In this document: positions 5,642 through 60,451 of the stretch, one piece after another
How positions within the stretch are numbered: the first letter of the stretch is position 1
Layout of the letters: each line of letters starts with the position of its first letter
IMG/VR virus record: IMGVR_UViG_3300036781_000418
Span: 248,001-312,000 of that record
Direction: 5' to 3' (one strand)
DNA length: 64,000 bases
Notes under the pieces: generated by a model
What the model was told of the DNA's origin: nothing
The model's input: the letters and a program-made list of their open reading frames with translations, nothing else
Database searches by the model: none
Made by a program: the position numbers and the translations under genes

Positions 5642-5716
5642 GGGAGTATGGCGTAGTCGGAAACGTACTTGGCTCTTACCCATGTGTCCACGGTTCGAAT
5701 CCGTGTGCTCCCACCA
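5642..5716 (+). tRNA. tRNA-Lys(CTT)
   Basis: Cloverleaf, loop CTCTTAC, TTCGAAT, CCA end. Confidence 0.85.
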
Positions 5717-5724
5717 TCCAACAT

Positions 5725-5799
5725 GCCTCCGTCGTCTAGTGGCTAGGACATTGCACTTTCACTGCAAGAAAGACGGATCGAAACCGTTCGGAGGCACCA
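5725..5799 (+). tRNA. tRNA-Glu(TTC)
   Basis: TTGCA-CTTTCAC-TGCAA anticodon arm, CCA end. Confidence 0.9.
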
Positions 5800-5843
5800 A
5801 CACTAAGGACGATGAAAGTCGCCCTTCTAAGTAGAATGAGCGT

Positions 5844-6071
5844 ATGAAGCTTCCATCTACACACCAAATCGGCGACAACGTCAACTACACCCTCAAGCAA
5901 GAGGGACCTTGCCGCCTTATCGTACCAGCCATCGTACGACGTGTCATCTTTACTGAAAGCAAGGTGATTTACGACCTTACTACAAAAGATAACGTCGTTC
6001 AAGAAGTTGATTCAGTTTGGATCAGCTCAGCGGAGATGGAGCAAGACAGTTCCCCAGTAGCACAGTGGTAG
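5844..6071 (+). CDS. Small hypothetical protein within tRNA array
   Basis: ORF whose TAG lies in the D-loop of tRNA-Asn. Confidence 0.6.
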   Translation: MKLPSTHQIGDNVNYTLKQEGPCRLIVPAIVRRVIFTESKVIYDLTTKDNVVQEVDSVWISSAEMEQDSSPVAQW

Positions 6072-6126
6072 TTGCGCCTGACTGTTAATCAGGATGTCGG
6101 TGGTTCGAGCCCATCCTGGGGAGCCA
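6051..6126 (+). tRNA. tRNA-Asn(GTT)
   Basis: TCCCCAG/CTGGGGA acceptor, CTGTTAA loop, GCCA. Confidence 0.92.
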
Positions 6127-6137
6127 ACAAGATTTAT

Positions 6138-6213
6138 GGGTCCGTAGCTCAGTGGTAGAGCGTCTGCCTGAAGAGCAGAGCGTCGTCGGTTCGAATCCGA
6201 CCGTGACCCACCA
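6138..6213 (+). tRNA. tRNA-Phe(GAA)
   Basis: Canonical cloverleaf, CTGAAGA loop. Confidence 0.92.
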
Positions 6214-6214
6214 T

Positions 6215-6290
6215 GTGTCTCAAGCCAATCAGGTGATGGCGTCGGTCTGAAGAACCGAACAGTCCGGTTCAATTCCGGAGGGACACACCA
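6215..6290 (+). tRNA. tRNA-Phe(GAA), second copy
   Basis: TCGGT-CTGAAGA-ACCGA, CCA end. Confidence 0.85.
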
Positions 6291-6299
6291 ATCCAACAT

Positions 6300-6373
6300 G
6301 GAGCGTTGATATATGGGTATTATGCTTGACTGTCTATCAGGCCAAACGGGTTCGAGTCCCGTACGCTCCGCCA
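6300..6373 (+). tRNA. tRNA-Asp(GTC)
   Basis: CTTGA-CTGTCTA-TCAGG, GCCA. Confidence 0.88.
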
Positions 6374-6382
6374 ACTTACAAT

Positions 6383-6474
6383 TCCCTTGTACTCTAATGG
6401 TAAGAGACCTGGCTGTTAACCAGACGTAGTCCGTCTAGAACGGTATGGAGGTTCGAGTCCTTCCGAGGGAGCCA
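6383..6474 (+). tRNA. tRNA-Asn(GTT) with long variable arm (92 nt)
   Basis: CTGTTAA loop; extra CCGT-CTAGA-ACGG hairpin in variable region. Confidence 0.75.
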
Positions 6475-6478
6475 ACAT

Positions 6479-6553
6479 GGTGCTGAAGCTGAATGGTTAC
6501 GCAGCGGTCTCATAAGCCGTGTGTCGTGGGTTCGATTCCCACCTGCACCACCA
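6479..6553 (+). tRNA. tRNA-Met/Ile2(CAT), elongator type
   Basis: G1-C72, CTCATAA loop. Confidence 0.85.
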
Positions 6554-6664
6554 GCATTTTAGACGCGCAACATCCTTGAGAATAATGGGTTGCTCCACCA
6601 AGGTAGAGGCAGGGGTTGCATACAAAAGCGTTGAAGGAACGACCGATAGGCCTTCACCAACAGT

Positions 6665-6738
6665 TGGGGTGTAGTGTAATGGAAGCACAACAGGCTTTGA
6701 CCCTGTTAGCGTGGGATCGATACCCGCCGCCCCTGCCA
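6665..6738 (+). tRNA. tRNA-Gln(TTG)
   Basis: ACAGG-CTTTGAC-CCTGT, GCCA. Confidence 0.88.
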
Positions 6739-6767
6739 GATAAATATGAGGATCAACGAAAGCATCA

Positions 6768-7226
6768 ATGAACCTCACAAAACTTACCCAACTCAATGAG
6801 TCGACTGACGCTGACCTACTTTCCAAGCTGGACAATGTGTGTAAGCTCTCCATTCAGATGGAGTTGAAGCCGATTAAGTTCGCCAAGAACACCTCCAATG
6901 AGGACAAAGCCGAGGCCACAAAGCTCGCCATTGATCACTACAAGTCACGACTGGACAACTTTTGGTTTGATTCCAGGGCGCTTACGTCAGGCGTAAACGG
7001 CATCAAGGCCTACATGGAAGAATGCTCAAAGCATGGATTTAAGTACGACGCTGCGGCTTGTGAAAAGTTGATCGGAGAGATGACGCATGCGAAGTTAGTT
7101 GGCGACCTTGCTTCAACCATCACCACGCACATTGCCCTTGCCGCCCAAGGCCGTACGAACCGCACTTGGGATTCAGATCAGCAAACTGCGGCGATCCTTC
7201 TGATGAAGGTCGTCGGTATCAAATAA
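6768..7226 (+). CDS. Late protein with internal-protein-like N-terminus; paralog of 9915..10358
   Basis: TAAATA 6741; MNLTKLTQLNE. Confidence 0.75.
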   Translation: MNLTKLTQLNESTDADLLSKLDNVCKLSIQMELKPIKFAKNTSNEDKAEATKLAIDHYKSRLDNFWFDSRALTSGVNGIKAYMEECSKHGFKYDAAACEKLIGEMTHAKLVGDLASTITTHIALAAQGRTNRTWDSDQQTAAILLMKVVGIK

Positions 7227-7231
7227 ACAAA

Positions 7232-7302
7232 CTCACCGCCAAAGGAATGGTCCGAACGCTACGAACGTTTGGCAGGAGGTTCGAGTCCTCTCGGTGGGTC
7301 CA
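7232..7302 (+). tRNA. Atypical tRNA-Arg(ACG), shortened D region
   Basis: CTCACCG/CGGTGGG acceptor, CTACGAA loop, intact T arm, TCCA end. Confidence 0.7.
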
Positions 7303-7310
7303 CCAACAAT

Positions 7311-7385
7311 GGCGTTCGTAGTGTAATGGTAGCACCAGAGACTGTGAATCTTTTAGTGCGGGTTCGAACCCCGTCGATCGCCCCA
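7311..7385 (+). tRNA. tRNA-His(GTG)
   Basis: Encoded G-1:C73 pair, CTGTGAA loop. Confidence 0.9.
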
Positions 7386-7391
7386 ATTAAC

Positions 7392-7465
7392 GCGTTCGTG
7401 GTGTAATGACTGCATAACCGGCCGAAAGCTGGCAGGGCCTGGGTAGAGACCAGGCGAACGCACCA
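7392..7465 (+). pseudogene. Degenerate tRNA-like gene
   Basis: Perfect acceptor and T stems, ACCA end; T loop GTAGAGA; anticodon loop lacks U33. Confidence 0.6.
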
Positions 7466-7537
7466 AAATTGACAACCGCTTTGGTTGACGGTTATCTCAT
7501 TTCCAGAATCCCCCGTCACCTGTTCTTTGTTGTCTAT

Positions 7538-7612
7538 GGCTGCCTAGCTCAGTGGTAGAGCAATGTCTTGATAAGGCATAGGTCGTTGGTCCGATTCCAA
7601 CGGTAGCCACCA
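7538..7612 (+). tRNA. tRNA-Ile(GAT)
   Basis: ATGTC-TTGATAA-GGCAT, ACCA. Confidence 0.88.
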
Positions 7613-7616
7613 AATT

Positions 7617-7690
7617 GCCTCTGTAATTCAATGGCAGAATACCGTGCTGATAACGCGGCTACGCAGGTTCGATTCCTGACGGAGGCACCA
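7617..7690 (+). tRNA. tRNA-Ile(GAT), second copy
   Basis: CCGTG-CTGATAA-CGCGG, ACCA. Confidence 0.88.
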
Positions 7691-7722
7691 GCTAAATAGT
7701 CATGTACTCAATGGAGATCTAC

Positions 7723-7971
7723 ATGGCTGATACGACCACAACCCCTGCAACTGACCTTTCCACCGCGGTTGACTCCGCCGCCGTTCAGGCGATCGTGGAC
7801 AAGAAGTTCTGGCAGTCGAAGACTTTTTGGGCCAACGTCATTCTCGCTGGAGCGATCCTCTTGCAGATGAAGACAGGCTTCTTGATCAGCCCAGACCTAC
7901 AAGGTCTCGCGATCACTGGTATCAACCTCGTGCTGCGTAAGTTCACGAGCGGAGCCGTCACGCTCTGGTAA
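7723..7971 (+). CDS. Small membrane protein, holin-like
   Basis: KKFWQSKTFWANV motif plus 2 hydrophobic segments; TAAATA 7693. Confidence 0.6.
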   Translation: MADTTTTPATDLSTAVDSAAVQAIVDKKFWQSKTFWANVILAGAILLQMKTGFLISPDLQGLAITGINLVLRKFTSGAVTLW

Positions 7972-7979
7972 CAAACTGA

Positions 7980-8053
7980 TGGGACGTGGTGTAGTGGTAA
8001 CATGTGGGGATCTGACCCCCTCGCCCTAGGTTCGATTCCTAGCGTCCTTGCCA
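7980..8053 (+). tRNA. tRNA-Gln(CTG)
   Basis: ATCTGAC loop, TTCGATT, GCCA. Confidence 0.8.
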
Positions 8054-8059
8054 AACAAT

Positions 8060-8124
8060 GGGACCAATTCGGTCACTTGATTTTCGTTCCTTAAGAACCG
8101 TAAGTCATCGTTATCGTCCCGCCA
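8060..8124 (+). pseudogene. tRNA remnant
   Basis: GGGAC/GTCCC-GCCA ends; no recognisable T loop. Confidence 0.4.
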
Positions 8125-8129
8125 ACAAT

Positions 8130-8202
8130 GGAGCCTAAGCCTGATTGGTGAGGGTGCAGTATGATTGCTGTTAAGATGGAGTTCGAATCTCTATGGGCTC
8201 CC
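8130..8202 (+). pseudogene. tRNA-like gene with contracted anticodon loop
   Basis: Acceptor, D and T arms intact; CAGTA-TGAT-TGCTG 4-nt loop; no CCA. Confidence 0.55.
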
Positions 8203-8213
8203 CTAATCTGAAA

Positions 8214-8669
8214 GTGACTCTTGAGCCGGCTGGTAAGCGTGGCTTGAAGTTTCTGATCTACGCGGTAGTTAACGGACGTAAGCGTGAAGTTGGATACCTC
8301 AACTCCGCCGTCACTCGGAACATCACGAAGCATGAAGTACTCGCGGCTCACGATGACTACAAGCTCGTCAAGCGCATCTTCAAGCAGGTTCCGGACGAGT
8401 ACACGTTCAACTACTACTGGCTGCAGAAGCTCTTCGTCTACGAGGAGTACAGTGGTCTTGGTATTGGTTCAGCGGCCCTGCAAGTTTGGTTTACCAAGCT
8501 GCGATCGATCGCGATGGTGGCCTTGGAAGCCTATCCAATTGGGTACCGAACGAAGGTGGAGCTTGAACGGTTCTACCTCAAGAACAACTTCGTCGTGTTT
8601 CATCGACTGCGTCCAGCAGGAGAGCGACAACGGCGAGCAACGATGGCCATGACGTTCGTCAAGGCCTAA
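8214..8669 (+). CDS. GNAT-family acetyltransferase-like protein (start uncertain)
   Basis: LFVYEEYSGLGIGSAAL motif A; FYLKNNF motif B. Confidence 0.7.
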   Translation: MTLEPAGKRGLKFLIYAVVNGRKREVGYLNSAVTRNITKHEVLAAHDDYKLVKRIFKQVPDEYTFNYYWLQKLFVYEEYSGLGIGSAALQVWFTKLRSIAMVALEAYPIGYRTKVELERFYLKNNFVVFHRLRPAGERQRRATMAMTFVKA

Positions 8670-8676
8670 CGAATAT

Positions 8677-8752
8677 GGGTGATTGGTGTAGTTGGCAGCA
8701 TAGCGGTCTCCAAAACCGTTGGTCATGGGTTCGAGTCCCTGGTCGCCCGCCA
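8677..8752 (+). tRNA. tRNA-Trp(CCA)
   Basis: GCGGT-CTCCAAA-ACCGT, GCCA. Confidence 0.92.
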
Positions 8753-8809
8753 TATAGCTTTGAGTAAGCTTGCTAAATAGGAAGCAACAATTCCATTTAG
8801 GAGTCTCTC

Positions 8810-9046
8810 ATGGCACTTCGCAACGTAACGGGCCCAGCCCTGCACAGCTTCACGACTGACGAGCTTACCGCGATCGTCGGCAACTACGGCCCATCGGGCA
8901 CCATTGACGACGGCGCAATCGCTCCTGGTGCAATGGTTTGGAACACGGATGAGTCCGCAGTTTGGGTCTTTGACGGCACGACGTTCAGCGCCGTAGCCGC
9001 CGCTCCAGCTCCAGCTCCTTCGCCTGCACCGGCTCCATCGCCGTAA
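8810..9046 (+). CDS. Small late protein with (AP)n tail, fibre-module-like
   Basis: TAAATA 8774; GAMVWNTDESAVWVFDGTTF resembles fibre N-terminal repeat. Confidence 0.65.
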   Translation: MALRNVTGPALHSFTTDELTAIVGNYGPSGTIDDGAIAPGAMVWNTDESAVWVFDGTTFSAVAAAPAPAPSPAPAPSP

Positions 9047-9070
9047 TTCAGTCGTAGGCTGAAAACAAAG

Positions 9071-9100
9071 AAGGGGAACCGAGTGATCGGTTCCCCTTAC
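9071..9100 (+). terminator. Hairpin terminator
   Basis: AAGGGGAACCGA-GTGA-TCGGTTCCCCTT. Confidence 0.75.
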
Positions 9101-9104
9101 TTAC

Positions 9105-9378
9105 TTCGCGGTGACCCTTGGTGGTACCCTACTTTCTGGAGCAGCCAGGAAAGCGGAAAGGTCGGCTGAGGTTCCACACAACTGAAAGGAATCGTTTACC
9201 GGTGACCAAAGTTCCGGCAAAACACGACACCTCAGCTGGCCGTGTTCCTATTTGCTTCTCTAAGCAAGTACATTTTACGCAGCGACGTCTTCGGATAACA
9301 CTGCACATTTCAGGTTTAAGAAAGGATGCATCATGATGATCAGCTCGACGCTTGATGCGTCTGGTAAACACACCTCCT
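9105..9378 (+). ncRNA. Unidentified multi-stem RNA (about 270 nt)
   Basis: 13-bp stem 9160-9172/9229-9241 enclosing a junction; 10-bp stem 9324-9333/9353-9362; further hairpins; no convincing gene. Confidence 0.55.
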
Positions 9379-9381
9379 AAT

Positions 9382-9455
9382 GGGGGTGTAGCTCAAGGGT
9401 AGAGCAGGTGGCTTTTAACCACCCGGCGAGGGTTCGATCCCCTCCACCCCTACCA
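9382..9455 (+). tRNA. tRNA-Lys(TTT)
   Basis: GGTGG-CTTTTAA-CCACC, ACCA. Confidence 0.92.
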
Positions 9456-9489
9456 AATCACGTAAATAGCTGACCATATTGGAGTCCCC

Positions 9490-9918
9490 ATGAAGCTCAG
9501 CACCATTTCCGAACTCATCGCCATCAACGAAGCGGCGCTTAAGATCAGCGATACCGGTTGGTACGTAATCGATCCGACCGTGCACGACGGCGATAACCCG
9601 CACTACAAGAAGGCCGCTGGCCCGTACAGGACGCGTGAAGAGGCGAAGGAGTACGCCACTGGCAAGGACCAAGTTAAGTTCGGTCACATGGTCAACAACG
9701 GCTTCATTGAGGTCGATGAACATGGCACCTCGAACGAAGGCTACGTCGCCGTTTCACAGGCGCTGGTCTACGTGAAGAAGGCGATTGGCGCCCTTGCTGA
9801 AAGCGAGAACGAAGTGAAGGAGCACCTTGAGATGCTTGGCTTTGACATCTCCTTCGACAACCTGCTTCAACAGCTGAACGACCTTGAGGAACACCTTAAG
9901 GACGCGTCGACAAAATGA
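9490..9918 (+). CDS. Late protein with internal-protein-like N-terminus
   Basis: TAAATA 9463; MKLSTISELIAINE. Confidence 0.75.
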   Translation: MKLSTISELIAINEAALKISDTGWYVIDPTVHDGDNPHYKKAAGPYRTREEAKEYATGKDQVKFGHMVNNGFIEVDEHGTSNEGYVAVSQALVYVKKAIGALAESENEVKEHLEMLGFDISFDNLLQQLNDLEEHLKDASTK

Positions 9919-10358
9919 AACTGATTCAGCTGAATGAAAACCTTGACGAGGCGAAAATTGACGCCTTCATCAAGGCCTACAACGGCATTGAAGCGCCACT
10001 CGCTAAGAAGCTCAAGCCGAAAGGATCGCCTGAGATGATCAAGGCGGCCTTTGACCTTGCATTTGATCATCATCAACGAGATGAAGTTCTGGACTTTGAT
10101 GACGCGGCGATGACACGTGGCATCAAGGGCATCGAAGCCGCCCTCAACGCGGCCAAGGAGTACAAGACGTCAATTGACGTCGCCGCTTGCACCAAGGCCT
10201 CCATGGAGCTGAGTCAGCTCCGAAACTTTGGCAAGCTGGCCACTGACGTCGGCAACGCCATGTTCGTCGCTTTGCAGGGACTGAACAACGAACATTGGTC
10301 TAAGGATGATCAAGCCCAAGCCCTACTCGCCTGTAAGTCGGTAGGCATCAGTAAATAA
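9915..10358 (+). CDS. Late protein, paralog of 6768..7226
   Basis: MKLIQLNE; colinear similarity. Confidence 0.75.
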   Translation: MKLIQLNENLDEAKIDAFIKAYNGIEAPLAKKLKPKGSPEMIKAAFDLAFDHHQRDEVLDFDDAAMTRGIKGIEAALNAAKEYKTSIDVAACTKASMELSQLRNFGKLATDVGNAMFVALQGLNNEHWSKDDQAQALLACKSVGISK

Positions 10359-10359
10359 T

Positions 10360-10435
10360 GCATCGTTGACCTGAGAGGTTAAGGACCCTCCTTACAAGTG
10401 GGAATATGCTGGTTCGAGTCCAGCACGATGCACCA
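10360..10435 (+). tRNA. tRNA-Val(TAC)
   Basis: CTTACAA loop, ACCA. Confidence 0.88.
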
Positions 10436-10442
10436 TATAATA

Positions 10443-10518
10443 GCTCTGGAAGTGTTACAAGGTGGCATGACAGTTTCGTAATCTGTAGGACGCGGTTCGA
10501 GGCCGCGCCGGAGCACCA
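10443..10518 (+). tRNA. tRNA-Thr(CGT)
   Basis: TTCGTAA loop, ACCA. Confidence 0.85.
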
Positions 10519-10579
10519 AAATTCCCGGGAGGACGCGCAAGCGTCCTCCTATTTTCGCATCAACAACTGGAGAAAATCC

Positions 10580-10966
10580 ATGAACGCCGACTTCCATTCT
10601 CGCTTTATCACCAACACGGACGACACAGGCCGTTTCATCGTGAGCTCACAGCGGACGGGTATTCGGTACTACGTGGAACCGGTCGTGACGGAGCACACCC
10701 CTGAGTGGGGCTCCATCGATCCAGCCACCGGCAACCTTACCCACAAGAAGGGTGACGGCAAGTACCGTGGCGGTGTCTCACCGTCTGAGTCCATCGTGAA
10801 CGAGGATGCGGTCAAGGTTGGTGTCTTCGCGAAGGTGCACGACCTTGGACGAGGCGTGTCACCACACCAGGCGATTGACTACCTCGACGCACAGTACCCA
10901 ACCGTCAACCCAGCGTATGAGCTCACCGCTGAGTTTATCGGCTCCATCGTCAACCCAGCCTACTAA
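10580..10966 (+). CDS. Hypothetical phage protein
   Basis: GGAG RBS; ORF. Confidence 0.75.
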   Translation: MNADFHSRFITNTDDTGRFIVSSQRTGIRYYVEPVVTEHTPEWGSIDPATGNLTHKKGDGKYRGGVSPSESIVNEDAVKVGVFAKVHDLGRGVSPHQAIDYLDAQYPTVNPAYELTAEFIGSIVNPAY

Positions 10967-10974
10967 GGATTATC

Positions 10975-11196
10975 ATGGCTACCCTCAAGGACCTCGTTGG
11001 TCCGGACAAGACCGTCCACTTTCAATTCTATCGTAAGGGTGCGCTCTACTATCGCACGTCAGACAACTTTGAATTCTTGGTGCCGATTGAGGACTGTGGT
11101 GACGCGGAATTTTTGGCAATGGACAAGGCTATGATGTTCATGCGGTACATTCGCAAACAGCTAGCCGTCAACGCTGAAGGCAGGGAGGCTGTATGA
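10975..11196 (+). CDS. Hypothetical phage protein
   Basis: AGGA RBS; ORF. Confidence 0.7.
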   Translation: MATLKDLVGPDKTVHFQFYRKGALYYRTSDNFEFLVPIEDCGDAEFLAMDKAMMFMRYIRKQLAVNAEGREAV

Positions 11197-11372
11197 ACGC
11201 CAAGAAGCTGGAAAAGAAGAAGCTCAAGCTCGCCGAGCGGATCAAGCAGCTGGAGGATGGGCTCGTCCTCTCCCTCCAGAAGAAGTCCTCCTCAGCAACC
11301 GAGATCGACATGCCTGGCACGATGCGCCAGATCCGAGAGCTGAAGGAAGAGCTGGACGAGCTAAATAGCTAA
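11193..11372 (+). CDS. Small coiled-coil protein
   Basis: ATGA overlap, 59 aa. Confidence 0.6.
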   Translation: MNAKKLEKKKLKLAERIKQLEDGLVLSLQKKSSSATEIDMPGTMRQIRELKEELDELNS

Positions 11373-11384
11373 CCAACAATTTAC

Positions 11385-11459
11385 GCTGTCATAGTGCTAG
11401 TGGAAACACACGTCTTTGGTAAGGACGGATCGAAGGTTCGATTCCTTCTGGCAGCACCA
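11385..11459 (+). tRNA. tRNA-Thr(GGT)
   Basis: CGTCT-TTGGTAA-GGACG, ACCA. Confidence 0.9.
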
Positions 11460-11806: not shown

Positions 11807-11887
11807 TGACAGGTGGTGTAATCCGGATGGCAACACACTTGGGCCCAACTTAAGGAGATGCTGGTTCGACCCCAGCCCTGTCAGCCA
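11807..11887 (+). tRNA. Atypical tRNA-Trp(CCA)-like
   Basis: TGACAGG/CCTGTCA acceptor, 13-nt D loop, GCCCAAC anticodon loop. Confidence 0.6.
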
Positions 11888-11888
11888 A

Positions 11889-11996
11889 ATGCAACTACTC
11901 ATCCTCATTATCCTGGCGCCGCTCTGGTTGCCGATCGCGATCATTGGAGCCCCACTGTGGCTCCTCCTCATGGTAATCCTTTCATGGAAGCGCTGA
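11889..11996 (+). CDS. 35-aa hydrophobic peptide
   Basis: MQLLILIILAPLWLPIAIIGAPLWLLLMVILSWKR. Confidence 0.45.
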   Translation: MQLLILIILAPLWLPIAIIGAPLWLLLMVILSWKR

Positions 11997-12379
11997 ACCA
12001 CAAGCAGGTTATCGTCCTGCGTAAGGACCTCAACATGCGTAAGGGCAAGCTGGTTGCACAGGGCGCGCACGCCTCAATGGCGGCGATCCTTAGCCAGGGC
12101 CAGGCCACCGACGTTGGTGACACCTTCACCATTCAGCTGGACGATCGCATGAAGGACTGGCTCCTAGGCTCCTTCAAGAAGATCACAGTCTCAGTAAACT
12201 CGGAGGAGGAGCTGCTGTCCCTGTACGAGCGAGCTAAAGGTTCAGGTCTGATCTGCTCACTGATCCTTGACTCTGGCCTGACCGAATTTGGTGGTCGCCC
12301 CACCTACACCGCGGTCGCCGTCGGTCCGGACGTAGCTGCGAAGGTCGACGTGCTCACCGGTGACCTTCCGCTGCTGTAG
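11984..12379 (+). CDS. pth2: Peptidyl-tRNA hydrolase, Pth2 type
   Basis: KQVIVLRKDLNMRKGKLVAQGAHAS; DSGLTEF; TAVAVGP. Confidence 0.92.
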   Translation: MEALNHKQVIVLRKDLNMRKGKLVAQGAHASMAAILSQGQATDVGDTFTIQLDDRMKDWLLGSFKKITVSVNSEEELLSLYERAKGSGLICSLILDSGLTEFGGRPTYTAVAVGPDVAAKVDVLTGDLPLL

Positions 12380-14117: not shown

Positions 14118-14411
14118 ATGCCGCACTTCACCACCTTGATCTTTGGCACGGGCAACGTTGAAGCGAACCGAGAACTTGATCGGCTTCGGGCACTGGATTG
14201 CTGGGTGTCGGGTGAAGTGCAGCCGACCAGCAATCGCCCACATGTGCATGTAGGCGTGTCGGCACAGGTGGAGCTGCCAGCCCATGGCTACTTCGTTGAT
14301 GCCACCTTAACCTACCACGAGTTGGAGCTACGCGCCCAGGTCTTTCCAAATGGACAGATCATGAGCGTGCTGGTTCCAGTTGGTGCGACTGTATGCGGAT
14401 ATGGATCCTAA
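14118..14411 (+). CDS. Hypothetical protein
   Basis: ORF in operon. Confidence 0.6.
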   Translation: MPHFTTLIFGTGNVEANRELDRLRALDCWVSGEVQPTSNRPHVHVGVSAQVELPAHGYFVDATLTYHELELRAQVFPNGQIMSVLVPVGATVCGYGS

Positions 14412-15459
14412 GCTGCTAACGCGTGACGACTTCCGAGAGGGGGTCTTTAAACGCGACAACTACAAGTGCATCTTCTGCGGTAAATCCGCAGCTGAAACGC
14501 CTGAGGGCAAGCTCGACGCCCACCACATCCTTGAGCGTCGGCTTTGGCCGGACGGCGGTTATTATCTGGAGAACGGCGCGACCGTCTGTGAGGAGCACCA
14601 CCTTGAATGCGAACGAACTATCAAGAGCGTGGAGGAAGTTAGAGCTCAATGCGGTGTATCCAAGATCTGGGTGCCACCGCACCTATACCCCGATCATCTC
14701 TATGACAAGTGGGGAAATCCAGTCCTTGATGACGGCCGTCGCGGCCGTGGGGAACTCTATCACGATGAGTCTGTTCAAAAGGCTCTCGGAGCTGGAGGCG
14801 TCCTCGACCTCTTCACGTGGTATGTCAAGTACGAGCGGACGTTCCATCTCCCATGGAGTCCAGGACTCCATGACGACGACAAGGCCTTAAAGGACTGCTC
14901 ACAGTTCGAGGGTCAGCGCGTTATCGTGTCCTACAAAGCGGACGGCGAGAACACGACGGGTTACCATGACGGTCATATTCACGCACGGTCGATCGACTCC
15001 CGTGGTGGTGAGGACCGAGCATGGGTGAAGAAGTTCCTGATTGAACAGGTGTGCTTCAACCTACCTGAAGGCTGGCGGATCTGCGGTGAAAACCTGTGGG
15101 CCGAGCACTCCATCCACTACGACGACCTGAAGTCGTACTTTTACGGGTTTAGTATCTGGAACGAGCGCAACACGTGCTTGTCCTGGGACGAAACGGTGGA
15201 GTGGTTCGAGCTGCTTAGCGTGACTCCGGTCGACGTCCTGTATGACGGTGTATGGGACGAAGCGCTGATCCGGAAAATGGCCTCGCAGGTTGACACGGTA
15301 AAACACGAAGGTCTTGTGATAAGATTGGCTCGGAGCTTCACGTACGGTGACTTCCGGAAAAGTGTCGCGAAGTACGTCCGTGAAGGGCATGTGCAGACCA
15401 CCAAGCACTGGCGTACGGGACGCGCGTTTGTTCCCAACGAACTGGAGCGAAAGCCATGA
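14401..15459 (+). CDS. HNH domain fused to ATP-dependent RNA ligase
   Basis: RDNYKCIFCG...DAHHI...NGATVCEEHH; KADGENTT motif I; HEGLVIR; KYVR. Confidence 0.85.
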   Translation: MDPKLLTRDDFREGVFKRDNYKCIFCGKSAAETPEGKLDAHHILERRLWPDGGYYLENGATVCEEHHLECERTIKSVEEVRAQCGVSKIWVPPHLYPDHLYDKWGNPVLDDGRRGRGELYHDESVQKALGAGGVLDLFTWYVKYERTFHLPWSPGLHDDDKALKDCSQFEGQRVIVSYKADGENTTGYHDGHIHARSIDSRGGEDRAWVKKFLIEQVCFNLPEGWRICGENLWAEHSIHYDDLKSYFYGFSIWNERNTCLSWDETVEWFELLSVTPVDVLYDGVWDEALIRKMASQVDTVKHEGLVIRLARSFTYGDFRKSVAKYVREGHVQTTKHWRTGRAFVPNELERKP

Positions 15460-30229: not shown

Positions 30230-33076
30230 TCACTTCGCCTCAAGGACCGCGACGCGAGCGCGCAGCTCCTGAACTTCCTTGACGAGCAACGGAACGAGCT
30301 TTGAGAAGTCAACACCCCATGCGTCCGTCTGTGCATCGTCGCCACCGACCTTGACGGCGTCTGGAACAACCTCGAACAGCTCTTGTGCGATGAAGCCAAG
30401 TTGAACATGTGTCGGGTCCGTCTTGAAGTTGAACGACCGAACTTGGATGGCGTCGATGGCGGTGGACTGGCTTACGGCAGGAACGATGTTCTCCTTCAAC
30501 CGCTGGTCCGAGGATACGTTGTACAGCACGCCCGTGGTGCCGTTCTGGGTGACACCGCCGATCAAGCCGCCGTTGTAGTAGTACGACGTGTAGCTTGAAC
30601 CAGTGGAGGTGCCAGACGTGTGGCCAGTGTAGATGTTCGCAGCACCGGCTCCGGTGATCACGTTCCCGCCGACGTTAGTTGCGATCTGCGATGTGTCAGT
30701 GTACCCAACCAACAGATTACCTGAACCGTCAAGAGTCATCGACTGCGTGAAGGTAATCGCGGTTCCTGCAGTTGGAGTACCGACCGATGAGTACCATTGA
30801 TGGTTCCCTGTGCTTGGTGAGAACTCGTTCAGCCCAGCTTTTGCGGTGAAGCGTGCAATCCAGTTCGCGCCGTTGAAATAGCTGTTGTAGGCGGTGCCAA
30901 CGTTCGTAGTACCTGAGTCATAGTGTGCCAAGTACGAGCCGAACTGCATGGCTTTCATGGTGCCCCATGCATCTGGAATGACGTTCAAGCCAAGAATACC
31001 GTTCGCATCCAACGCCATGGAGGATGTCAAGGTCGCCGCATTCCCGGCGGTGCCTGCTGGGGCCGACTGCCATTGGAACGAACCATTTGACACCGTGAAG
31101 GCAGCGCCACCGGTGGAACCAGCATACGTGTACTGTGATCCAGTGTAGAATAGGTTCTCAATCAAGCGAATTGAATCTCCACGGGCCCAGAGTGAACCAG
31201 TAGTTCCACTCGTACCGCCAGCACCCGCCGAAGAAAGTTGGATGACCTTTGCCCCTGACTCCCAAGCGCTCGGCGTAACGCCCTGTCCTACGTTGCCGTT
31301 GTTATCAAGGCGAACGCGCTCGGTACCAGTTGGTCCACCAGTGTATAGAGAAAGGAATGCACCTGCACCGATAGACACGCGAGATTCGGTGGTTGAGCGC
31401 AGGTACAAACCAGTCAGGTTTGCTGGGGTGCTGGTGTCACCGATCACCACCGGCGCGGACGCAGCTCCGGCATGAGACACCAACAGGCCGCTAGCACCGG
31501 TGATGAAGCCAGTTGCCGAAGCACCGATACCAAGTGCCCCACTTAGCAGGCTCTGGTTTGTACCTGACTGGTTGATGAAGTAGTTGCCAGTGAACGCAAG
31601 GTTGTCGGCGATGGTGGCGTTGTTCGTGCCAACCGTCTGATCAAGCGCATACAGCCCGATCGCACGGGTGATCGTCGAGCCCGCGCCCTTGATGATCGCC
31701 TGTGATGCGTATCCAGCAACGTACGGCACCGTGAACGCGGAGGCCGCGGTAGCTGGAACTGAGTTTACGCCGATGGCGGCGACCGTCGCCGTGGCGGTGA
31801 TCGCCAACGCTGAGTTCACGCCAGTCTGTGACGTACTAGCCAACGGACCAGAGGTGCCAACCGTCAGGGCCGCGGACGAAACGTACGAGCTGGCGCCGAG
31901 CCCGGTTGGCTTGCTGGTGTTCAAGCCGTTTCCATCGTACGTGAACGAGCCAGACGATGTCAGCGCCTTTGAACCACCAGTGTACATCACGCAGTTCGCC
32001 GATAGGTTCGACATCGTAAGGTTGCCGGCCAAGGTGATGCTGCCGCCGATGAACGACGCCACGTTACTCTGTTGGTTGATGAACCATGAGCCAGTAAAGT
32101 TGGTCGTGTCCGCGAGCGTGGCGTTGTTCGTGCCCGCCGTTTGGGTTGGTGCAAGGATACCAACGGTGTTCGTAATCGTCGAGCCTGCACCCTTGATGAT
32201 CGGCGCGCTGTTGAAGTTCGAGACATACGGTGCCGTAAACGTCGCGGCTGAAGTTGACGTTGCTGAGGAGACACCAACCACGGCGACCGTCGCGGCGGAC
32301 GTAGCCGTCAACGAAGTCAGCTGGCCAATTTGGGTCGTCGTCGACAGTGGGTTGGTGTTGGCGATGGAGACGGCTGAGTTGGCGGCCGTTGAACCGGCCA
32401 GACCCAACAAGCTGCCACTGGTGATCAGCTGACTGGTGCCCACCTGCAGTCCGTTGACTGGAAGGTTGAGCGTACCCGTCATGGTGTCACCGGTCTTCTG
32501 TACGAAGCCAGTACCCAGCGCACCCGTGATGTCGGAGCTTGTCACCGCGGTGGTACCGGTGACAAGGCCCTTGCCGTTGACCGTCACCTTCAAGAAGGAA
32601 CCGGTGCCGCTGTCCGTTTGGTTAGCAAGCGACGAGATGATGTTGACGTTCTGGGAACCGTCGAAGGTGGTCGAGCCGGTGACAGCGCCTGAGATGACGA
32701 TGTTCCGACCAGTCTCAAGCAAGGTCGCCTTGGAGGCGGTGCCGATGAAGTTGGAAGCCGTCACCGTGCCGGTTGAGCTGACGTTGCCGCCTGCGACGAC
32801 GAGCTGACCAACGCCGACGTTCAGACCGTTGGATGGCAGGTTCAAGGTGCCAGTCATGGTATCACCGGACTTCAACACGAACAAGCCGTCGGCGTCGGTG
32901 CTCAGTCGAGCCCAGTCACCGTTCAGGTAGCAGTACATGCCCTTGATTGACAGGTCCGAATCTGAACGGTAGAACAGCTCGCCTTCATCTGGATCCGATG
33001 GAAAGCTAGCACCGGACGCAATGGACGCGTTGGCGATCACCGATCCTTCTTGGATCTGTACACCGTGAAACTTCAT
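30230..33076 (-). CDS. Tail fibre with C-terminal S74 intramolecular chaperone
   Basis: SSDQRLKENI...LGFIAQEL; G/S/T-rich repeats; late promoter 33101-33106. Confidence 0.88.
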   Translation of the reverse strand: MKFHGVQIQEGSVIANASIASGASFPSDPDEGELFYRSDSDLSIKGMYCYLNGDWARLSTDADGLFVLKSGDTMTGTLNLPSNGLNVGVGQLVVAGGNVSSTGTVTASNFIGTASKATLLETGRNIVISGAVTGSTTFDGSQNVNIISSLANQTDSGTGSFLKVTVNGKGLVTGTTAVTSSDITGALGTGFVQKTGDTMTGTLNLPVNGLQVGTSQLITSGSLLGLAGSTAANSAVSIANTNPLSTTTQIGQLTSLTATSAATVAVVGVSSATSTSAATFTAPYVSNFNSAPIIKGAGSTITNTVGILAPTQTAGTNNATLADTTNFTGSWFINQQSNVASFIGGSITLAGNLTMSNLSANCVMYTGGSKALTSSGSFTYDGNGLNTSKPTGLGASSYVSSAALTVGTSGPLASTSQTGVNSALAITATATVAAIGVNSVPATAASAFTVPYVAGYASQAIIKGAGSTITRAIGLYALDQTVGTNNATIADNLAFTGNYFINQSGTNQSLLSGALGIGASATGFITGASGLLVSHAGAASAPVVIGDTSTPANLTGLYLRSTTESRVSIGAGAFLSLYTGGPTGTERVRLDNNGNVGQGVTPSAWESGAKVIQLSSAGAGGTSGTTGSLWARGDSIRLIENLFYTGSQYTYAGSTGGAAFTVSNGSFQWQSAPAGTAGNAATLTSSMALDANGILGLNVIPDAWGTMKAMQFGSYLAHYDSGTTNVGTAYNSYFNGANWIARFTAKAGLNEFSPSTGNHQWYSSVGTPTAGTAITFTQSMTLDGSGNLLVGYTDTSQIATNVGGNVITGAGAANIYTGHTSGTSTGSSYTSYYYNGGLIGGVTQNGTTGVLYNVSSDQRLKENIVPAVSQSTAIDAIQVRSFNFKTDPTHVQLGFIAQELFEVVPDAVKVGGDDAQTDAWGVDFSKLVPLLVKEVQELRARVAVLEAK

Positions 33077-37925: not shown

Positions 37926-37996
37926 CTCACCGCCAATGGATTGGTCCGATCCCTCCGAAGGATTGGTGTCGGGTTCGAATCCCGACGGTGGGTCCA
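37926..37996 (+). tRNA. Atypical tRNA-Arg(CCG), shortened D region
   Basis: Same scaffold as 7232..7302; GATCC-CTCCGAA-GGATT; TTCGAAT. Confidence 0.75.
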
Positions 37997-38010
37997 ACTG
38001 GAGATAGAAA

Positions 38011-38289
38011 ATGGCATTCATTCTTGAACAACTGCAGGCCCTGGCCGAAAAGAAGCGCGGTAAGAAGTGGAGCGCGGACGTTGAGACGAAGTGGGAACCT
38101 GAAGAGGGTTTCTTCGACGGCTCGGCTGGTAAGATCGCCAAGGGTCTCAAGGCCGCGAGCAAGGACCTGAAGCAGGCCATGTCGCGCCTGAACTTCTACG
38201 TCAACCGTGCTGGCAAGAAGCTGGACGACAAAGCCAAGGCCCGTCTGGACATGGCTAAGGAAAAGCTGAGCGCCTTGTATGAAGATTGA
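38011..38289 (+). CDS. DUF3175-like protein
   Basis: KKWSA...QAMSRLNFYVNRAGKKL. Confidence 0.7.
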   Translation: MAFILEQLQALAEKKRGKKWSADVETKWEPEEGFFDGSAGKIAKGLKAASKDLKQAMSRLNFYVNRAGKKLDDKAKARLDMAKEKLSALYED

Positions 38290-45446: not shown

Positions 45447-45640
45447 CTGTGAACCCCTGTTCGTCGGATCCAGCCTCAAAGCCGACTATCTGCAAGTAAG
45501 AAGACTTGAACGTGTCTCAGGTAGCTGGGATGTGATTTAGCTGCATATCACTAAAAAGTAGCAGGCCTAACGGGATGCCTATTACTCCGTTGTTCGGTCG
45601 TACCATCGTGTGACCGTCCCTTGCGATGTCGTTTTTCGCT
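45447..45640 (+). ncRNA. Candidate Y RNA(s) upstream of Ro60
   Basis: Multi-hairpin non-coding region directly 5' of TROVE gene. Confidence 0.5.
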
Positions 45641-45690
45641 CAACCACGTTTCCTTTTCTCTCGTTGAAACCCTTTGTTTTGGAGAACCAG

Positions 45691-47322
45691 ATGTCTGCAT
45701 CAACTTACACCGACTTTGCCCAGTCACAGAACCCAGCCAACGCCGTGACCCACCAGACGCAGCCGATCCCAGGCCGCGAAGGTGAGATGGCCAAGAACAA
45801 CGCGGGTGGCTTCACCTTCGCGCTTGACCAGTGGGGCGTGTTCGACCGCTTCCTGTTGATCGGTTCGGAAACCCCAGGCTACTACGTCGGTACCAAGGAG
45901 CAGACCGCTGAAAGCTTCAAGAGCACCATCGCGTGCGTCAAGGCCGACGGCCTCCGTGCGATCAACCGCCTGAAGGAAATCTCGCTCGCTGGTCGCGCAC
46001 CGAAGAACGACCCAGCCGTCGTGGCGCTCGCCTTGGCGGCCATCTACGGTGACGCCACGGTCAAGGCCGCCGCGTACGAAGCCCTGCCACAGGTCGCACG
46101 TACCGGCACCTGGCTGTTCCAGTTCGTCTCCATCGTCGACTCGCTCGGCAAGTGGAACGCGGCGACCAAGCGTGGTGTGGCCAACTGGTACACCAGCAAG
46201 AACCTCGACAAGCTGGCCATCCAGCTCCTGAAGTACCAGTCCCGCAACAACTGGTCGCACCGCGACGTGCTGCGTCTGGCCCACATCAAGCCGACGGAAC
46301 AGAACACCACGTTGTTCAAGTACGTGGTCAAGGGTGCCGACGGTATGGTGCAAGGCGACTTGCTGCCGAACCTCGTCATCGACTTCGAACGCCTGAAGCG
46401 CGCCACCACCAAGGCTGAGGTCTTGGCCGTCGTCAACGGCAACAAGGACGTCACGTGGGAAATGGTGCCGACGGTGTGGCACAAGGACAAGGACGTCATG
46501 CTGGCGTTGCTGCCGAACATGGGCCTGACCGCGATCATCCGCAAGCTTGGTATCCTCACCATGCACGGCGTCATCACGCAAGGCGACGGTCTGAAGCACG
46601 TCACCGACGTGCTGACCAATCCTGAGCAACTGACGCGCTCGCGCATTCACCCGCTCTCGGTGCTCCAGGCCTTCAAGCAGTACAGCCAAGGTCGCGGTGA
46701 AAAGGGCTCCAATACCTGGTCACCGGTCAACGACGTGAAGAACGCCCTTGACATGGCCTTCTACAGCGCGTTCCAGAACGTGCCAGGTACTGGTGGCTCC
46801 GTGTTCCTCGGTGTCGACTGCTCGGGCTCGATGTTCGGTGCTCCTGTCAACGGCTCGCCAAACTTGGTGGCCGCTGAAGTCGCCGCGGTGACCGCCCTGG
46901 CGATCGCCAAGCAGCAGAAGAACTACTTCATCGGTGGCTTCAACACCACGATGGCGCCGATCGGCATCGACCCGGATATGCGCCTTGACAAGGCGTTGGA
47001 GGTGATTCGTCGCTTCCCATGGGGCGGCACGAACTGCGCCCTGCCGATGATCTACGCCGCGCAGAAGAAGATGGAGGTCGACACGTTCGTGACCATCACG
47101 GACAATGAGACCTACGCTGGTTCGATCCAACCGTCTCAGGCCCTGCGCGACTACCGCAAGCAGTTCAAGAAGCCGAAGGCCTCGAACATCGTCATCGGTA
47201 CGTCCGTCAGCAAGTTCACGATCGCGGATCCGAAGGACCCGTACCAACTGGACATCGCCGGTTTCGACTCGGCCGCTCCGGTTCTGATCGCTGAGTTCAT
47301 GAAGGCTTCAGCCGCGACCTGA
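45691..47322 (+). CDS. rsr: Ro60/TROVE-domain RNA-binding protein
   Basis: NNAGGFTF..RFLLIGSE; KYQSRNNWSHRDVLRLAH; VDCSGSM; GGTNCALPM; ITDNET. Confidence 0.93.
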   Translation: MSASTYTDFAQSQNPANAVTHQTQPIPGREGEMAKNNAGGFTFALDQWGVFDRFLLIGSETPGYYVGTKEQTAESFKSTIACVKADGLRAINRLKEISLAGRAPKNDPAVVALALAAIYGDATVKAAAYEALPQVARTGTWLFQFVSIVDSLGKWNAATKRGVANWYTSKNLDKLAIQLLKYQSRNNWSHRDVLRLAHIKPTEQNTTLFKYVVKGADGMVQGDLLPNLVIDFERLKRATTKAEVLAVVNGNKDVTWEMVPTVWHKDKDVMLALLPNMGLTAIIRKLGILTMHGVITQGDGLKHVTDVLTNPEQLTRSRIHPLSVLQAFKQYSQGRGEKGSNTWSPVNDVKNALDMAFYSAFQNVPGTGGSVFLGVDCSGSMFGAPVNGSPNLVAAEVAAVTALAIAKQQKNYFIGGFNTTMAPIGIDPDMRLDKALEVIRRFPWGGTNCALPMIYAAQKKMEVDTFVTITDNETYAGSIQPSQALRDYRKQFKKPKASNIVIGTSVSKFTIADPKDPYQLDIAGFDSAAPVLIAEFMKASAAT

Positions 47323-53889: not shown

Positions 53890-53973
53890 CCGTGCGTCGG
53901 TTGTAAGTAAGGTAAGGAGGGTGGCCGTGGTGGGCTACCCTCCATTACCCCTCCCCTTGAAAGGCGACCCATC

Positions 53974-55335: not shown

Positions 55336-55337
55336 CC

Positions 55338-60314: not shown

Positions 60315-60451
60315 GCGTTTTCCTACTTGTAGGTAGATAGATCGGCTATTTAGCTTCCGGCGTCCCAAGTTCATGATCTTGCAGTCCAATCGATGGGTTG
60401 AGGTCGTCGCCCAAAAATCTACAATCATCTGTACACGTTTATGGAGACCTA

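What the first reader, a model, noticed from the sequence alone, without database searches (positions are those of the whole stretch)
9105..9378. Unidentified ~270-nt multi-stem RNA inside the tRNA array
Seen: between a terminator and tRNA-Lys, with no credible CDS. It has a 13-bp stem GGTCGGCTGAGGT/ACCTCAGCTGGCC enclosing a junction (TTCC/GGAA, TCGT..CCGG), a CTTTCTGG/CCAGGAAAG hairpin, TTGCTT/AAGCAA, a UUCG-capped GCAG/CTGC arm and a 10-bp GGATGCATCA/TGATGCGTCT stem. I do not recognise tmRNA, RNase P or group I intron motifs. Established: large ncRNAs such as GOLLD and ROOL occur near phage tRNA clusters.
Basis: partly seen in the sequence, partly recalled or inferred. Interest (0 to 1): 0.65.

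Follow-up and report, generated by a model that had tools for sequence, protein, structure and literature searches.

The report
Conserved leader hairpin before phage tRNA-Lys
The proposed 270-nt RNA in this soil jumbo phage is really two things: about 210 nt of unconserved spacer whose stems are no better than chance, and a 64-nt hairpin with a tiny open reading frame that six related phages keep directly in front of their tRNA-Lys(UUU) gene.

Summary
It does not behave as one RNA.

**5' part, stems P1-P4 (9105-9317).**
- It folds no better than shuffled sequence (z = -1.3).
- A 13-bp helix like its longest turns up in 3% of shuffles.
- BLAST, nhmmer and a covariance model find no homologue in 32 related jumbo-phage records.
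- The sequence at that position in relatives is a tRNA, a short spacer or a gene.

- It is conserved in six phage or metagenome contigs, always directly 5' of tRNA-Lys(UUU).
- Its helix is paired in 93% of cells, and 5 of 10 pairs show compensatory changes.
- The hairpin covers a Shine-Dalgarno-like GAAAGGA and an AUG that opens a 15-20 codon micro-ORF. The ORF stays in frame in all six, has an invariant AAA Lys codon, and ends at or just inside the tRNA.

The best reading is an orphan spacer plus a new, small cis-acting leader module of pre-tRNA-Lys(UUU). Whether the micro-ORF is translated is undecided, and no RNA data exist. Interest is modest.

The parts
9071..9098 (.). Perfect 12-bp G+C-rich hairpin, 25 nt after the stop of the 78-aa ORF (8810-9046). 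It is terminator-like. The U-rich tail is better on the - strand, and the + strand tail is ACUUACUU.
   Evidence: The consensus scan flags it only on the - strand.
9105..9317 (+). Orphan non-coding spacer carrying stems P1 (9133-9154), P2 (9160-9241, a 13-bp helix plus three-way junction), P3 (9249-9270) and P4 (9279-9304, cUUCGg loop). It is not conserved, and its fold is not above chance.
   Evidence: The stems are seen. The fold gives z = -1.29. A 13-bp helix occurs in 3% of shuffles. No homologue was found. There is no coding signal.
9318..9381 (+). Conserved leader module of tRNA-Lys(UUU): GAAAGGA, the P5 hairpin, and a single-stranded tail of the form AAAC-NN-ACCYCC.
   Evidence: Covariance model R1 scores six members at 27-89 bits. 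All six lie directly 5' of tRNA-Lys(UUU). The module is a single copy in its own genome.
9324..9362 (+). P5 hairpin, with arms at 9324-9333 and 9353-9362. It pairs the GGA of the SD-like motif and the first base of the AUG.
   Evidence: 93% of cells are paired, 5 of 10 pairs have compensatory changes, and 0 of 500 shuffles reach the covariation score. RNAalifold predicts it de novo. It is the MFE structure in all five sequences folded alone, at -16 to -21 kcal/mol.
9333..9380 (+). Micro-ORF of 15 codons plus a stop. The AAA Lys codon is at 9366-9368. The UAA stop ends 1 nt before the tRNA. The SD-like AAGGA sits 6 nt upstream.
   Evidence: The ORF is kept in frame in 6 of 6 members, and indels are multiples of 3. 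Third-codon-position changes are in excess (19 of 41, p = 0.057), which is suggestive only.
9382..9455 (+). tRNA-Lys, anticodon UUU. This is the gene the leader module always accompanies.
   Evidence: ARAGORN and Rfam tRNA at 70.1 bits.

Best explanation
The stretch is composite.

(1) 9099-9317 is a lineage-specific non-coding spacer between the terminator of the upstream 78-aa gene and the tRNA-Lys unit. Its stems P1-P4 have no support beyond what intergenic DNA of this genome usually shows. If it is transcribed, it is simply the distal 5' leader of the tRNA-Lys precursor.

(2) 9318-9381 is a conserved cis-acting leader module that travels with tRNA-Lys(UUU) in a sub-clade of soil jumbo phages. 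It is a 10-bp hairpin kept by compensatory substitutions. The hairpin occludes an SD-like GAAAGGA and the AUG of a 15-20 codon micro-ORF. The micro-ORF carries one invariant AAA (Lys) codon and stops at, or a few codons inside, the 5' end of the tRNA.

Shown: the conservation, the covariation, the fixed position next to tRNA-Lys(UUU), and the retention of the SD, the AUG and the frame.

Inferred: the module acts on the polycistronic mRNA/tRNA precursor. The hairpin would set the stability or processing of the 5' leader upstream of the RNase P site. If the micro-ORF is translated, ribosomes would open the hairpin and run up to the RNase P site, which would link translation to maturation of this tRNA.
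For: - **Module membership.** There are six members: the window, L036, L042, L068, L108 and L198. All lie immediately 5' of tRNA-Lys(UUU).
- **Helix.** 93% of cells are paired, 5 of 10 pairs are compensatory, and 0 of 500 shuffles reach the score. Slid controls give 18-52% paired. RNAalifold recovers the helix independently, as do single-sequence MFE folds.
- **Upstream context.** The sequence upstream of the module differs in every genome: a tRNA, a 55-nt spacer, a small ORF, a GGQ release-factor-like gene, or here the orphan spacer. Only the module and the tRNA move together.
- **P1-P4.** They fold at z = -1.29. They have no homologue by blastn or nhmmer, by whole-record BLAST or by covariance model R2.
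- **Micro-ORF.** The SD spacing is 6-7 nt, the ORF is open in 6 of 6, and indels are 3 and 9 nt.
- **Layout of the array.** ORFs that stop 1-8 nt before a tRNA are the normal layout here: 8669 before 8677, and 10358 before 10360.
Against: - There are no RNA data at all. The only run that holds the phage is the source soil DNA sample. Transcription, RNA ends and translation are therefore untested.
- Six sequences from one sub-clade is a small sample. The shuffle control does not correct for their relatedness.
- A single-sequence covariance model has limited reach, so a fast-evolving P1-P4 homologue could have been missed.
- The whole gap including the terminator is among the more structured gaps of the genome (z = -3.86, 4th of 27).
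- Close relatives such as G007 (74% ligase identity) carry tRNA-Lys(UUU) without the module, so it is dispensable.
- The third-codon-position excess is not significant (p = 0.057).
Confidence: 0.6

Rival explanations
1. The whole 9105-9378 stretch, or 9105 to about 9278 ending at the P3 hairpin plus its UUUU run, is a genuine orphan structured sRNA specific to this phage. It would be too young or too fast-evolving to have detectable homologues.
For: - The stems are + strand specific through G.U pairs.
- A 13-bp helix is seen in only 3% of shuffles.
- P4 has a cUUCGg tetraloop.
- P3 followed by CAUUUUA looks like a weak terminator and aligned to the terminator part of an unrelated sRNA model.
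- There is no CDS.
Against: - The fold gives z = -1.29 for P1-P4.
- 10 of 26 other gaps in the genome fold at least as far beyond their shuffles.
- No promoter-like site lies between 9098 and 9382.
- No homologue was found in 32 related records or elsewhere.
- The equivalent position in relatives holds unrelated sequence.
Confidence: 0.15
2. The functional product of 9333-9380 is the 15-aa peptide itself, so this is a tiny protein-coding gene. P5 would be only a translational throttle or incidental.
For: - The SD and AUG are kept in 6 of 6 members, the frame is kept through 3- and 9-nt indels, and the C-terminal K-R/H-T-S/P is conserved.
- Codon 2 is CGA, CGU or CGC, all synonymous.
- The pair L042/L198 differs at 6 third positions out of 8 differences.
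- In L198 the SD overlaps the stop of the upstream gene, which is the layout of coupled translation.
Against: - Where the helix changes, the amino acids change radically (Leu-Asp to Pro-Ser) while base-pairing is kept. The RNA structure is therefore the stronger constraint.
- Codons 3-5 and 12 vary freely.
- The stop position is not conserved: three of six read 3-5 codons into the tRNA.
- The overall third-position excess has p = 0.057.
- The peptide is too short for any homology search.
Confidence: 0.2
3. P1-P2 is a divergent Y RNA, the partner of the Ro60 orthologue that this phage encodes at 45610-47322.
For: - The phage encodes Ro60 with TROVE and vWA domains.
- No YrlA reaches threshold anywhere in the genome or within 8 kb of the gene.
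- Y RNAs are long-stem RNAs with a branched middle, and the known bacterial ones mimic tRNA (PMC4201824).
Against: - The best YrlA model hit near the region is 11.7 bits and overlaps tRNA-Lys.
- No GNCGAA Ro60-binding motif occurs in 9100-9381.
- The region is 36 kb from the gene, whereas the reported bacterial and phage YrlA candidates lie within 4 kb of the Ro60 gene, which was also a selection criterion of that study (PMC4201824).
- All five relatives tested keep Ro60 at 53-60% identity but have no P1-P2 homologue.
Confidence: 0.03
4. The region encodes a - strand product: the 80-aa ORF 9371-9129, or an antisense sRNA, ended by the 9098-9071 hairpin with its U-rich tail.
For: - The hairpin scores as a terminator only on the - strand, with tail CUUUGUUUUC.
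- AGGAGG lies at 9378-9373, upstream of a GTG start.
Against: - The codon log-odds of -0.58 and GC3 of 0.42 (genes: 0.75) are typical of a non-coding frame.
- The SD-to-start spacing is only 1 nt.
- The ORF has no PHROG match and no relative.
- The - strand fold gives z = -0.95 and -0.30, and the stems have A.C mismatches on that strand.
- Every neighbouring gene and tRNA is on the + strand.
Confidence: 0.03

Closest known systems
Small stable RNAs encoded in the phage T4 tRNA gene cluster (RNA C and RNA D, also called species 1 and 2).
   Same: They are non-tRNA, non-coding sequence embedded in a phage tRNA cluster. They are co-transcribed with tRNAs and released by precursor processing, and their function is unknown.
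   Different: The T4 species are discrete stable RNAs shown experimentally. Here nothing is known about transcripts. Only a 64-nt piece fixed to one tRNA is conserved, and it carries an SD/AUG micro-ORF.
Leader peptides and attenuators of amino-acid operons (trpL, hisL and similar types)
   Same: Both have a short SD-led ORF of 15-20 codons in a 5' leader, overlapping a hairpin and containing a codon read by the cognate tRNA (here AAA).
   Different: There is a single AAA rather than a run of regulatory codons. No alternative antiterminator or terminator pair exists, and no U-tract follows P5. The downstream gene is a tRNA rather than a biosynthetic operon.
GOLLD and ROOL large ncRNAs
   Same: They are located near phage or prophage tRNA genes.
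   Different: Neither Rfam model matches, even at E <= 10. Those RNAs are 500-800 nt, widely conserved and rich in covariation. P1-P4 here are orphan.
Bacterial and phage Y RNAs (YrlA, RF02553)
   Same: The phage encodes Ro60, and the candidate has a long closing helix around a branched core.
   Different: There is no model match, no GNCGAA motif, no tRNA-like T or D module, and the region is 36 kb from the Ro60 gene.
Mixed tRNA-mRNA operons (E. coli tyrT-tpr and thrU-tyrU-glyT-thrT-tufB). This comparison is from my own knowledge.
   Same: A very small ORF shares a transcript with tRNA genes, and RNase P or RNase E processing separates the parts.
   Different: In those operons the ORF lies 3' of the tRNAs. 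Here it abuts the 5' end of the tRNA and is wrapped in a conserved hairpin.

Membership tests
GOLLD / ROOL / other large ncRNAs in Rfam 15 | A match to the family covariance model at or near its gathering score | tested here: not met
   The gathering-threshold scan of the window gives only tRNAs. The scan at E <= 10 over 8950-9480 gives only chance hits of 12-17 bits to unrelated families.
tmRNA / RNase P RNA / group I intron | A match to the Rfam or ARAGORN model | tested here: not met
   ARAGORN finds no tmRNA. Rfam gives only a 12.7-bit hit to permuted tmRNA, and that hit overlaps the tRNA-Lys.
tRNA or tRNA pseudogene (for P1-P4) | A cloverleaf or T-arm match to RF00005 | tested here: not met
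   No tRNA hit falls in 9100-9381 even at E <= 10. The T-arm repeat families of the array do not include this region.
YrlA / Y RNA | A match to RF02553 | tested here: not met
   The best hit touching the region is 11.7 bits (E = 4.6) and overlaps tRNA-Lys. The family cut-off is 69 bits.
YrlA / Y RNA | A GNCGAA(N)G Ro60-binding motif near the 5' end (PMC4201824) | tested here: not met
   No GNCGAA occurs on either strand in window 9100-9381, which is L001 1501-1782.
YrlA / Y RNA | Location within about 4 kb of the Ro60 gene on the same strand (PMC4201824) | tested here: not met
   Ro60 lies at 45610-47322. That is the same strand but 36 kb away.
Attenuator leader peptide | A short SD-led ORF in the leader | tested here: met
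   GAAAGGA, 6-7 nt of spacer, an AUG and 15-20 codons are present in 6 of 6 members.
Attenuator leader peptide | Clustered regulatory codons, plus mutually exclusive hairpins ending in a terminator with a U-tract | tested here: not met
   There is one AAA codon only. A single conserved hairpin is followed by GGUAAACAC, with no U-run and no alternative pairing in the consensus fold.
Structured cis-regulatory or processing RNA motif (generic) | A helix maintained by compensatory substitutions across homologues in a fixed genomic context | tested here: met
   This holds for P5 only. 5 of 10 pairs are compensatory, 93% of cells are paired, and all six members sit 5' of tRNA-Lys(UUU).
Structured cis-regulatory or processing RNA motif (generic) | Evidence that the element is transcribed, and where its ends lie | not testable with these tools
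   Only the source soil DNA run holds the sequence, and no RNA run does.

The most novel reading that the evidence does not exclude
The leader module may be a translation-coupled sensor for its own tRNA. Ribosomes decoding the invariant AAA codon, 13 nt before the RNase P site, would pause when functional tRNA-Lys(UUU) is scarce. One cause of scarcity would be host anticodon nucleases of the PrrC type, which are known to target this tRNA (from my own knowledge). The paused ribosome would hold P5 open and alter processing or stability of the precursor. The phage would thereby adjust the supply of its replacement tRNA-Lys. The same genome region also encodes an RNA ligase, a PTH2-type hydrolase and Ro60.
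Probability: 0.08. Interest if true: 0.7.

Novelty: new variant of a known kind. Interest (0 to 1): 0.3.

Why it matters
As proposed, the finding would have been a new large phage ncRNA. The evidence does not support that, so it should not be carried forward as one.

What remains is smaller but real: a covarying hairpin with a micro-ORF that is physically tied to tRNA-Lys(UUU) in several uncultured soil jumbo phages. From my own knowledge, tRNA-Lys(UUU) is a classic target of host anticodon nucleases. Phage tRNA arrays are thought to replace depleted or cleaved host tRNAs. A dedicated leader for this one tRNA would be a handle on how phages control expression of individual tRNAs within an array.

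The module is short enough to test directly with RNase P processing assays and reporter fusions.

Tried and rejected
- **Flanking ORFs as anchors.** The 142-aa and 78-aa ORFs have no relative in IMG/VR. The 142-aa ORF is also an ORFan among 5.8 billion proteins. Exact look-ups return only the source contig.
- **The isolated-phage collection.** It gave only tRNA-level matches.
- **PrkA as an anchor.** It gave fragments and distant records with no similarity to the region.
- **The RNA ligase gene (14380-15459) as an anchor.** This one worked.
- **Stem-based pattern for P2 in IMG/VR.** It returned 82 loci, none matching model R2.
- **Leader patterns.** Chance matches were rejected for lack of a tRNA or a model score: L092, most of L096-L107, L192-L196 and L197-L208 except L198. 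L090 in G007 is a signal-peptide coding sequence.
- **Decayed-gene hypothesis for P1-P4.** Protein searches of relatives found nothing.
- **Leader-trailer pairing around the tRNA.** It is not seen in the consensus fold.
- **Promoters.** No sigma-70-like site lies in 9098-9382, and no repeated phage motif was found.
- **Read laying.** It was not used. The only holder is the source DNA run, kept as contigs, which cannot show RNA ends or expression.
- **Literature.** Searches for T4 stable RNAs and for jumbo-phage ncRNAs in tRNA arrays returned nothing relevant.

Full report
**Source and setting.** The window is bases 248001-312000 of a 342,591-bp IMG/VR virus record with direct terminal repeats, assembled from a soil metagenome. 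It is an uncultured jumbo phage. Positions 5642-11459 hold an array of 17-18 tRNA genes interleaved with small + strand ORFs. The finding lies in a 335-nt gap. The gap starts at the stop of a 78-aa ORF (9046), which is followed by a perfect 12-bp hairpin at 9071-9098, and it ends at tRNA-Lys(UUU) at 9382-9455.

**Check of the observation.**
- P1 at 9133-9154.
- P2, a 13-bp helix of 9160-9172 with 9229-9241 around a three-way junction.
- P3 at 9249-9270.
- P4 at 9279-9304, with a cUUCGg loop.
- P5, arms 9324-9333 and 9353-9362.

Each contains G.U pairs that would be A.C mismatches on the other strand. This agrees with MFE z-scores of -2.0 on the + strand and -0.95 on the - strand.

The absence of a credible CDS is confirmed:
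- The two longest ORFs are 72 aa (+) and 80 aa (-). Their codon log-odds are -0.48 and -0.58. Coding sequence averages +0.51 and non-coding frames average -0.78. Their GC3 is 0.44 and 0.42, against 0.75 in genes.
- The 80-aa ORF has no PHROG match. Neither ORF has a relative in five related phages.
- The source's gene caller left the gap empty.

Rfam gives nothing but the tRNA, even at E <= 10.

**Is the structure more than chance?**
- Without P5, the stretch 9105-9317 folds only 1.3 sd better than dinucleotide shuffles. 19 of 200 shuffles fold as well.
- An uninterrupted 13-bp helix appears in 3% of shuffles of the region.
- In a rough gene model of the same genome there are 68 gaps of 180 nt or more, and 335 nt is near their median length.
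- Of the 26 gaps I could fold, 10 reach z <= -2 on one strand.
- The whole gap with its terminator gives z = -3.86, which ranks 4th of 27. Much of that comes from the terminator hairpin.

Thermodynamics therefore does not single out P1-P4.

**Relatives.**
- The flanking ORFs are ORFans, and isolated phages match only at the tRNA level.
- An RNA ligase gene 5 kb downstream (14380-15459, phrog_24030) retrieved 35 related loci. Many come from 310-370-kb phages with tRNA arrays.
- blastn and nhmmer of the gap against these loci, and BLAST against ten whole records, found nothing for 9047-9317.
- Covariance model R2 (P1+P2, 117 nt, 34 pairs) matched only itself among 33 whole records, 12 of which are at least 90% complete. 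It matched nothing in 93 further loci, including 82 fetched with a P2-stem pattern.
- P1-P4 are therefore orphan.

**The conserved part.**
- The weak BLAST hits all fell just upstream of tRNA-Lys(UUU) in relatives.
- I built model R1 from three sequences. I then ran it on 32 whole related phage records and on the phage's own genome, and on loci fetched by exact-pattern scans of IMG/VR, the JGI metagenomes and 185,579 prokaryote genomes.
- This gave six members: window 9318-9381, L036:16104-16170, L042:20857-20921, L068:15487-15543, L108:1145-1211 and L198:5711-5644(-).
- Every one sits directly 5' of a tRNA-Lys(UUU) gene.
- None is found in bacterial or archaeal genomes, and there is one copy in the phage's own genome.
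- The sequence upstream of the module is different in each genome: a tRNA (L036, L068), 55 nt after tRNA-Met (L042), a small ORF (L108), a GGQ release-factor-like gene (L198), or here P1-P4.
- Some close relatives have tRNA-Lys(UUU) without the module, for example G007.

**Structure of the module.**
- The P5 helix is paired in 93% of cells. 5 of its 10 pairs show changes on both sides (A-U to G-C, U-A to C-G, C-G to G-C). 0 of 500 shuffles reach its covariation score. Sliding the partner strand drops pairing to 18-52%.
- RNAalifold on leader plus tRNA recovers P5 and the cloverleaf and nothing else.
- Each of the five sequences folded alone adopts P5 as its MFE structure, at -16 to -21 kcal/mol.

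**The micro-ORF.**
- In all six members GAAAGGA is followed after 6-7 nt by an AUG that opens a 15-20 codon frame.
- The consensus peptide is M-R-x-x-S-S-T-x-x-A-S-x-K-R-T-S/P.
- Length differences inside the frame are 3 and 9 nt.
- AAA-CGN/CAC-ACC is invariant or nearly so.
- The stop lies 1 nt before the tRNA in three members and 3-5 codons inside it in the other three.
- Third-codon positions carry 19 of 41 minimal changes (p = 0.057). The closest pair, L042 and L198, differs at 6 third positions out of 8 differences.
- Against a peptide-level constraint, the compensatory helix changes convert Leu-Asp to Pro-Ser. The RNA helix is therefore the dominant constraint.

Translation is plausible but not shown. 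ORFs ending 1-8 nt before a tRNA are the ordinary layout of this array, so a translated micro-ORF would not be out of place.

**Mechanism.**
- Shown: there is a conserved, covarying hairpin fixed to tRNA-Lys(UUU). It buries the GGA of the SD-like motif and the first base of the AUG. It is followed by a conserved single-stranded tail that carries AAA 13 nt before the RNase P site.
- Inferred: the module acts in cis on the precursor. The hairpin would define stability or processing of the leader. If ribosomes initiate, they would melt P5 and reach the RNase P site, coupling translation to maturation.
- There is no U-tract or alternative hairpin, so classical attenuation is not supported.

**Other readings considered.**
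- **Orphan sRNA.** This cannot be excluded without RNA data. P3 plus UUUU could be a weak terminator.
- **A - strand gene or sRNA.** The only hint is the better - strand U-tail of the 9071-9098 hairpin. Coding scores, SD spacing, fold and gene orientation all contradict it.
- **A Y RNA for the phage's Ro60 (45610-47322).** There is no YrlA match, no GNCGAA motif, and a distance of 36 kb. Five relatives keep Ro60 but have no P1-P2.

**Verdict.** The 270-nt multi-stem RNA is not supported as a unit. Its last stem belongs to a new, small, conserved leader module of phage tRNA-Lys(UUU). Interest is modest at 0.3. The most novel reading that the evidence leaves open is a translation-coupled sensor for this tRNA, and I put it at about 8%.

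Noticed in passing
window 45610-47322 (+): This is a Ro60 orthologue with TROVE and Ro60 vWA domains, and it is kept at 53-60% identity in five related jumbo phages. No YrlA/Y RNA reaches threshold in the genome. The weak full-length YrlA-like hits are at G000 220131-220252 (23 bits) and at window 37942-38044 (20 bits). The phage's Y RNA partner is unidentified.
   Followed up: partly
window 51919-56813 (+): This is a PrkA, DUF444 (YeaH-like) and SpoVR (YcgB-like) gene trio, which is a bacterial stress or sporulation-associated operon carried by the phage. PrkA relatives occur in about 30 other viral contigs.
   Followed up: no
window 14380-15459 (+) and 11984-12379 (+): An RNA ligase (phrog_24030, E = 3e-137, with an HNH-like N-terminal stretch) and a PTH2-type peptidyl-tRNA hydrolase flank the tRNA array. 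Together with Ro60 they form an RNA repair and tRNA maintenance toolkit.
   Followed up: no
window 6479-6550, 7275-7305, 11860-11890: Rfam calls a tRNA at 6479-6550 that ARAGORN missed. Two further T-arm plus CCA-like remnants look like uncalled or decayed tRNAs. L036 also has an uncalled tRNA-like unit just upstream of its leader.
   Followed up: no
window 6383-6474; L036:15919-16012; L038:19830-19921; L108:47-141: An unusually long tRNA-Asn(GUU) of 92-95 nt recurs in the window and its relatives. It may have a long extra arm or an intron.
   Followed up: no
L198:5712-6662 (- strand): In this relative a release-factor-like ORF with a GGQ motif ends with its stop codon overlapping the SD-like motif of the tRNA-Lys leader.
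   Followed up: no
window 9071-9098: The hairpin after the 78-aa ORF scores as an intrinsic terminator only on the - strand, with an A-run upstream and a U-run on the complement. No - strand gene is nearby, so it may be bidirectional.
   Followed up: partly
window 30230-33076 (-) and 58113-60458 (-): These are two large proteins with C-terminal Peptidase_S74 (endosialidase chaperone) domains, likely tail fibres or spikes.
   Followed up: no
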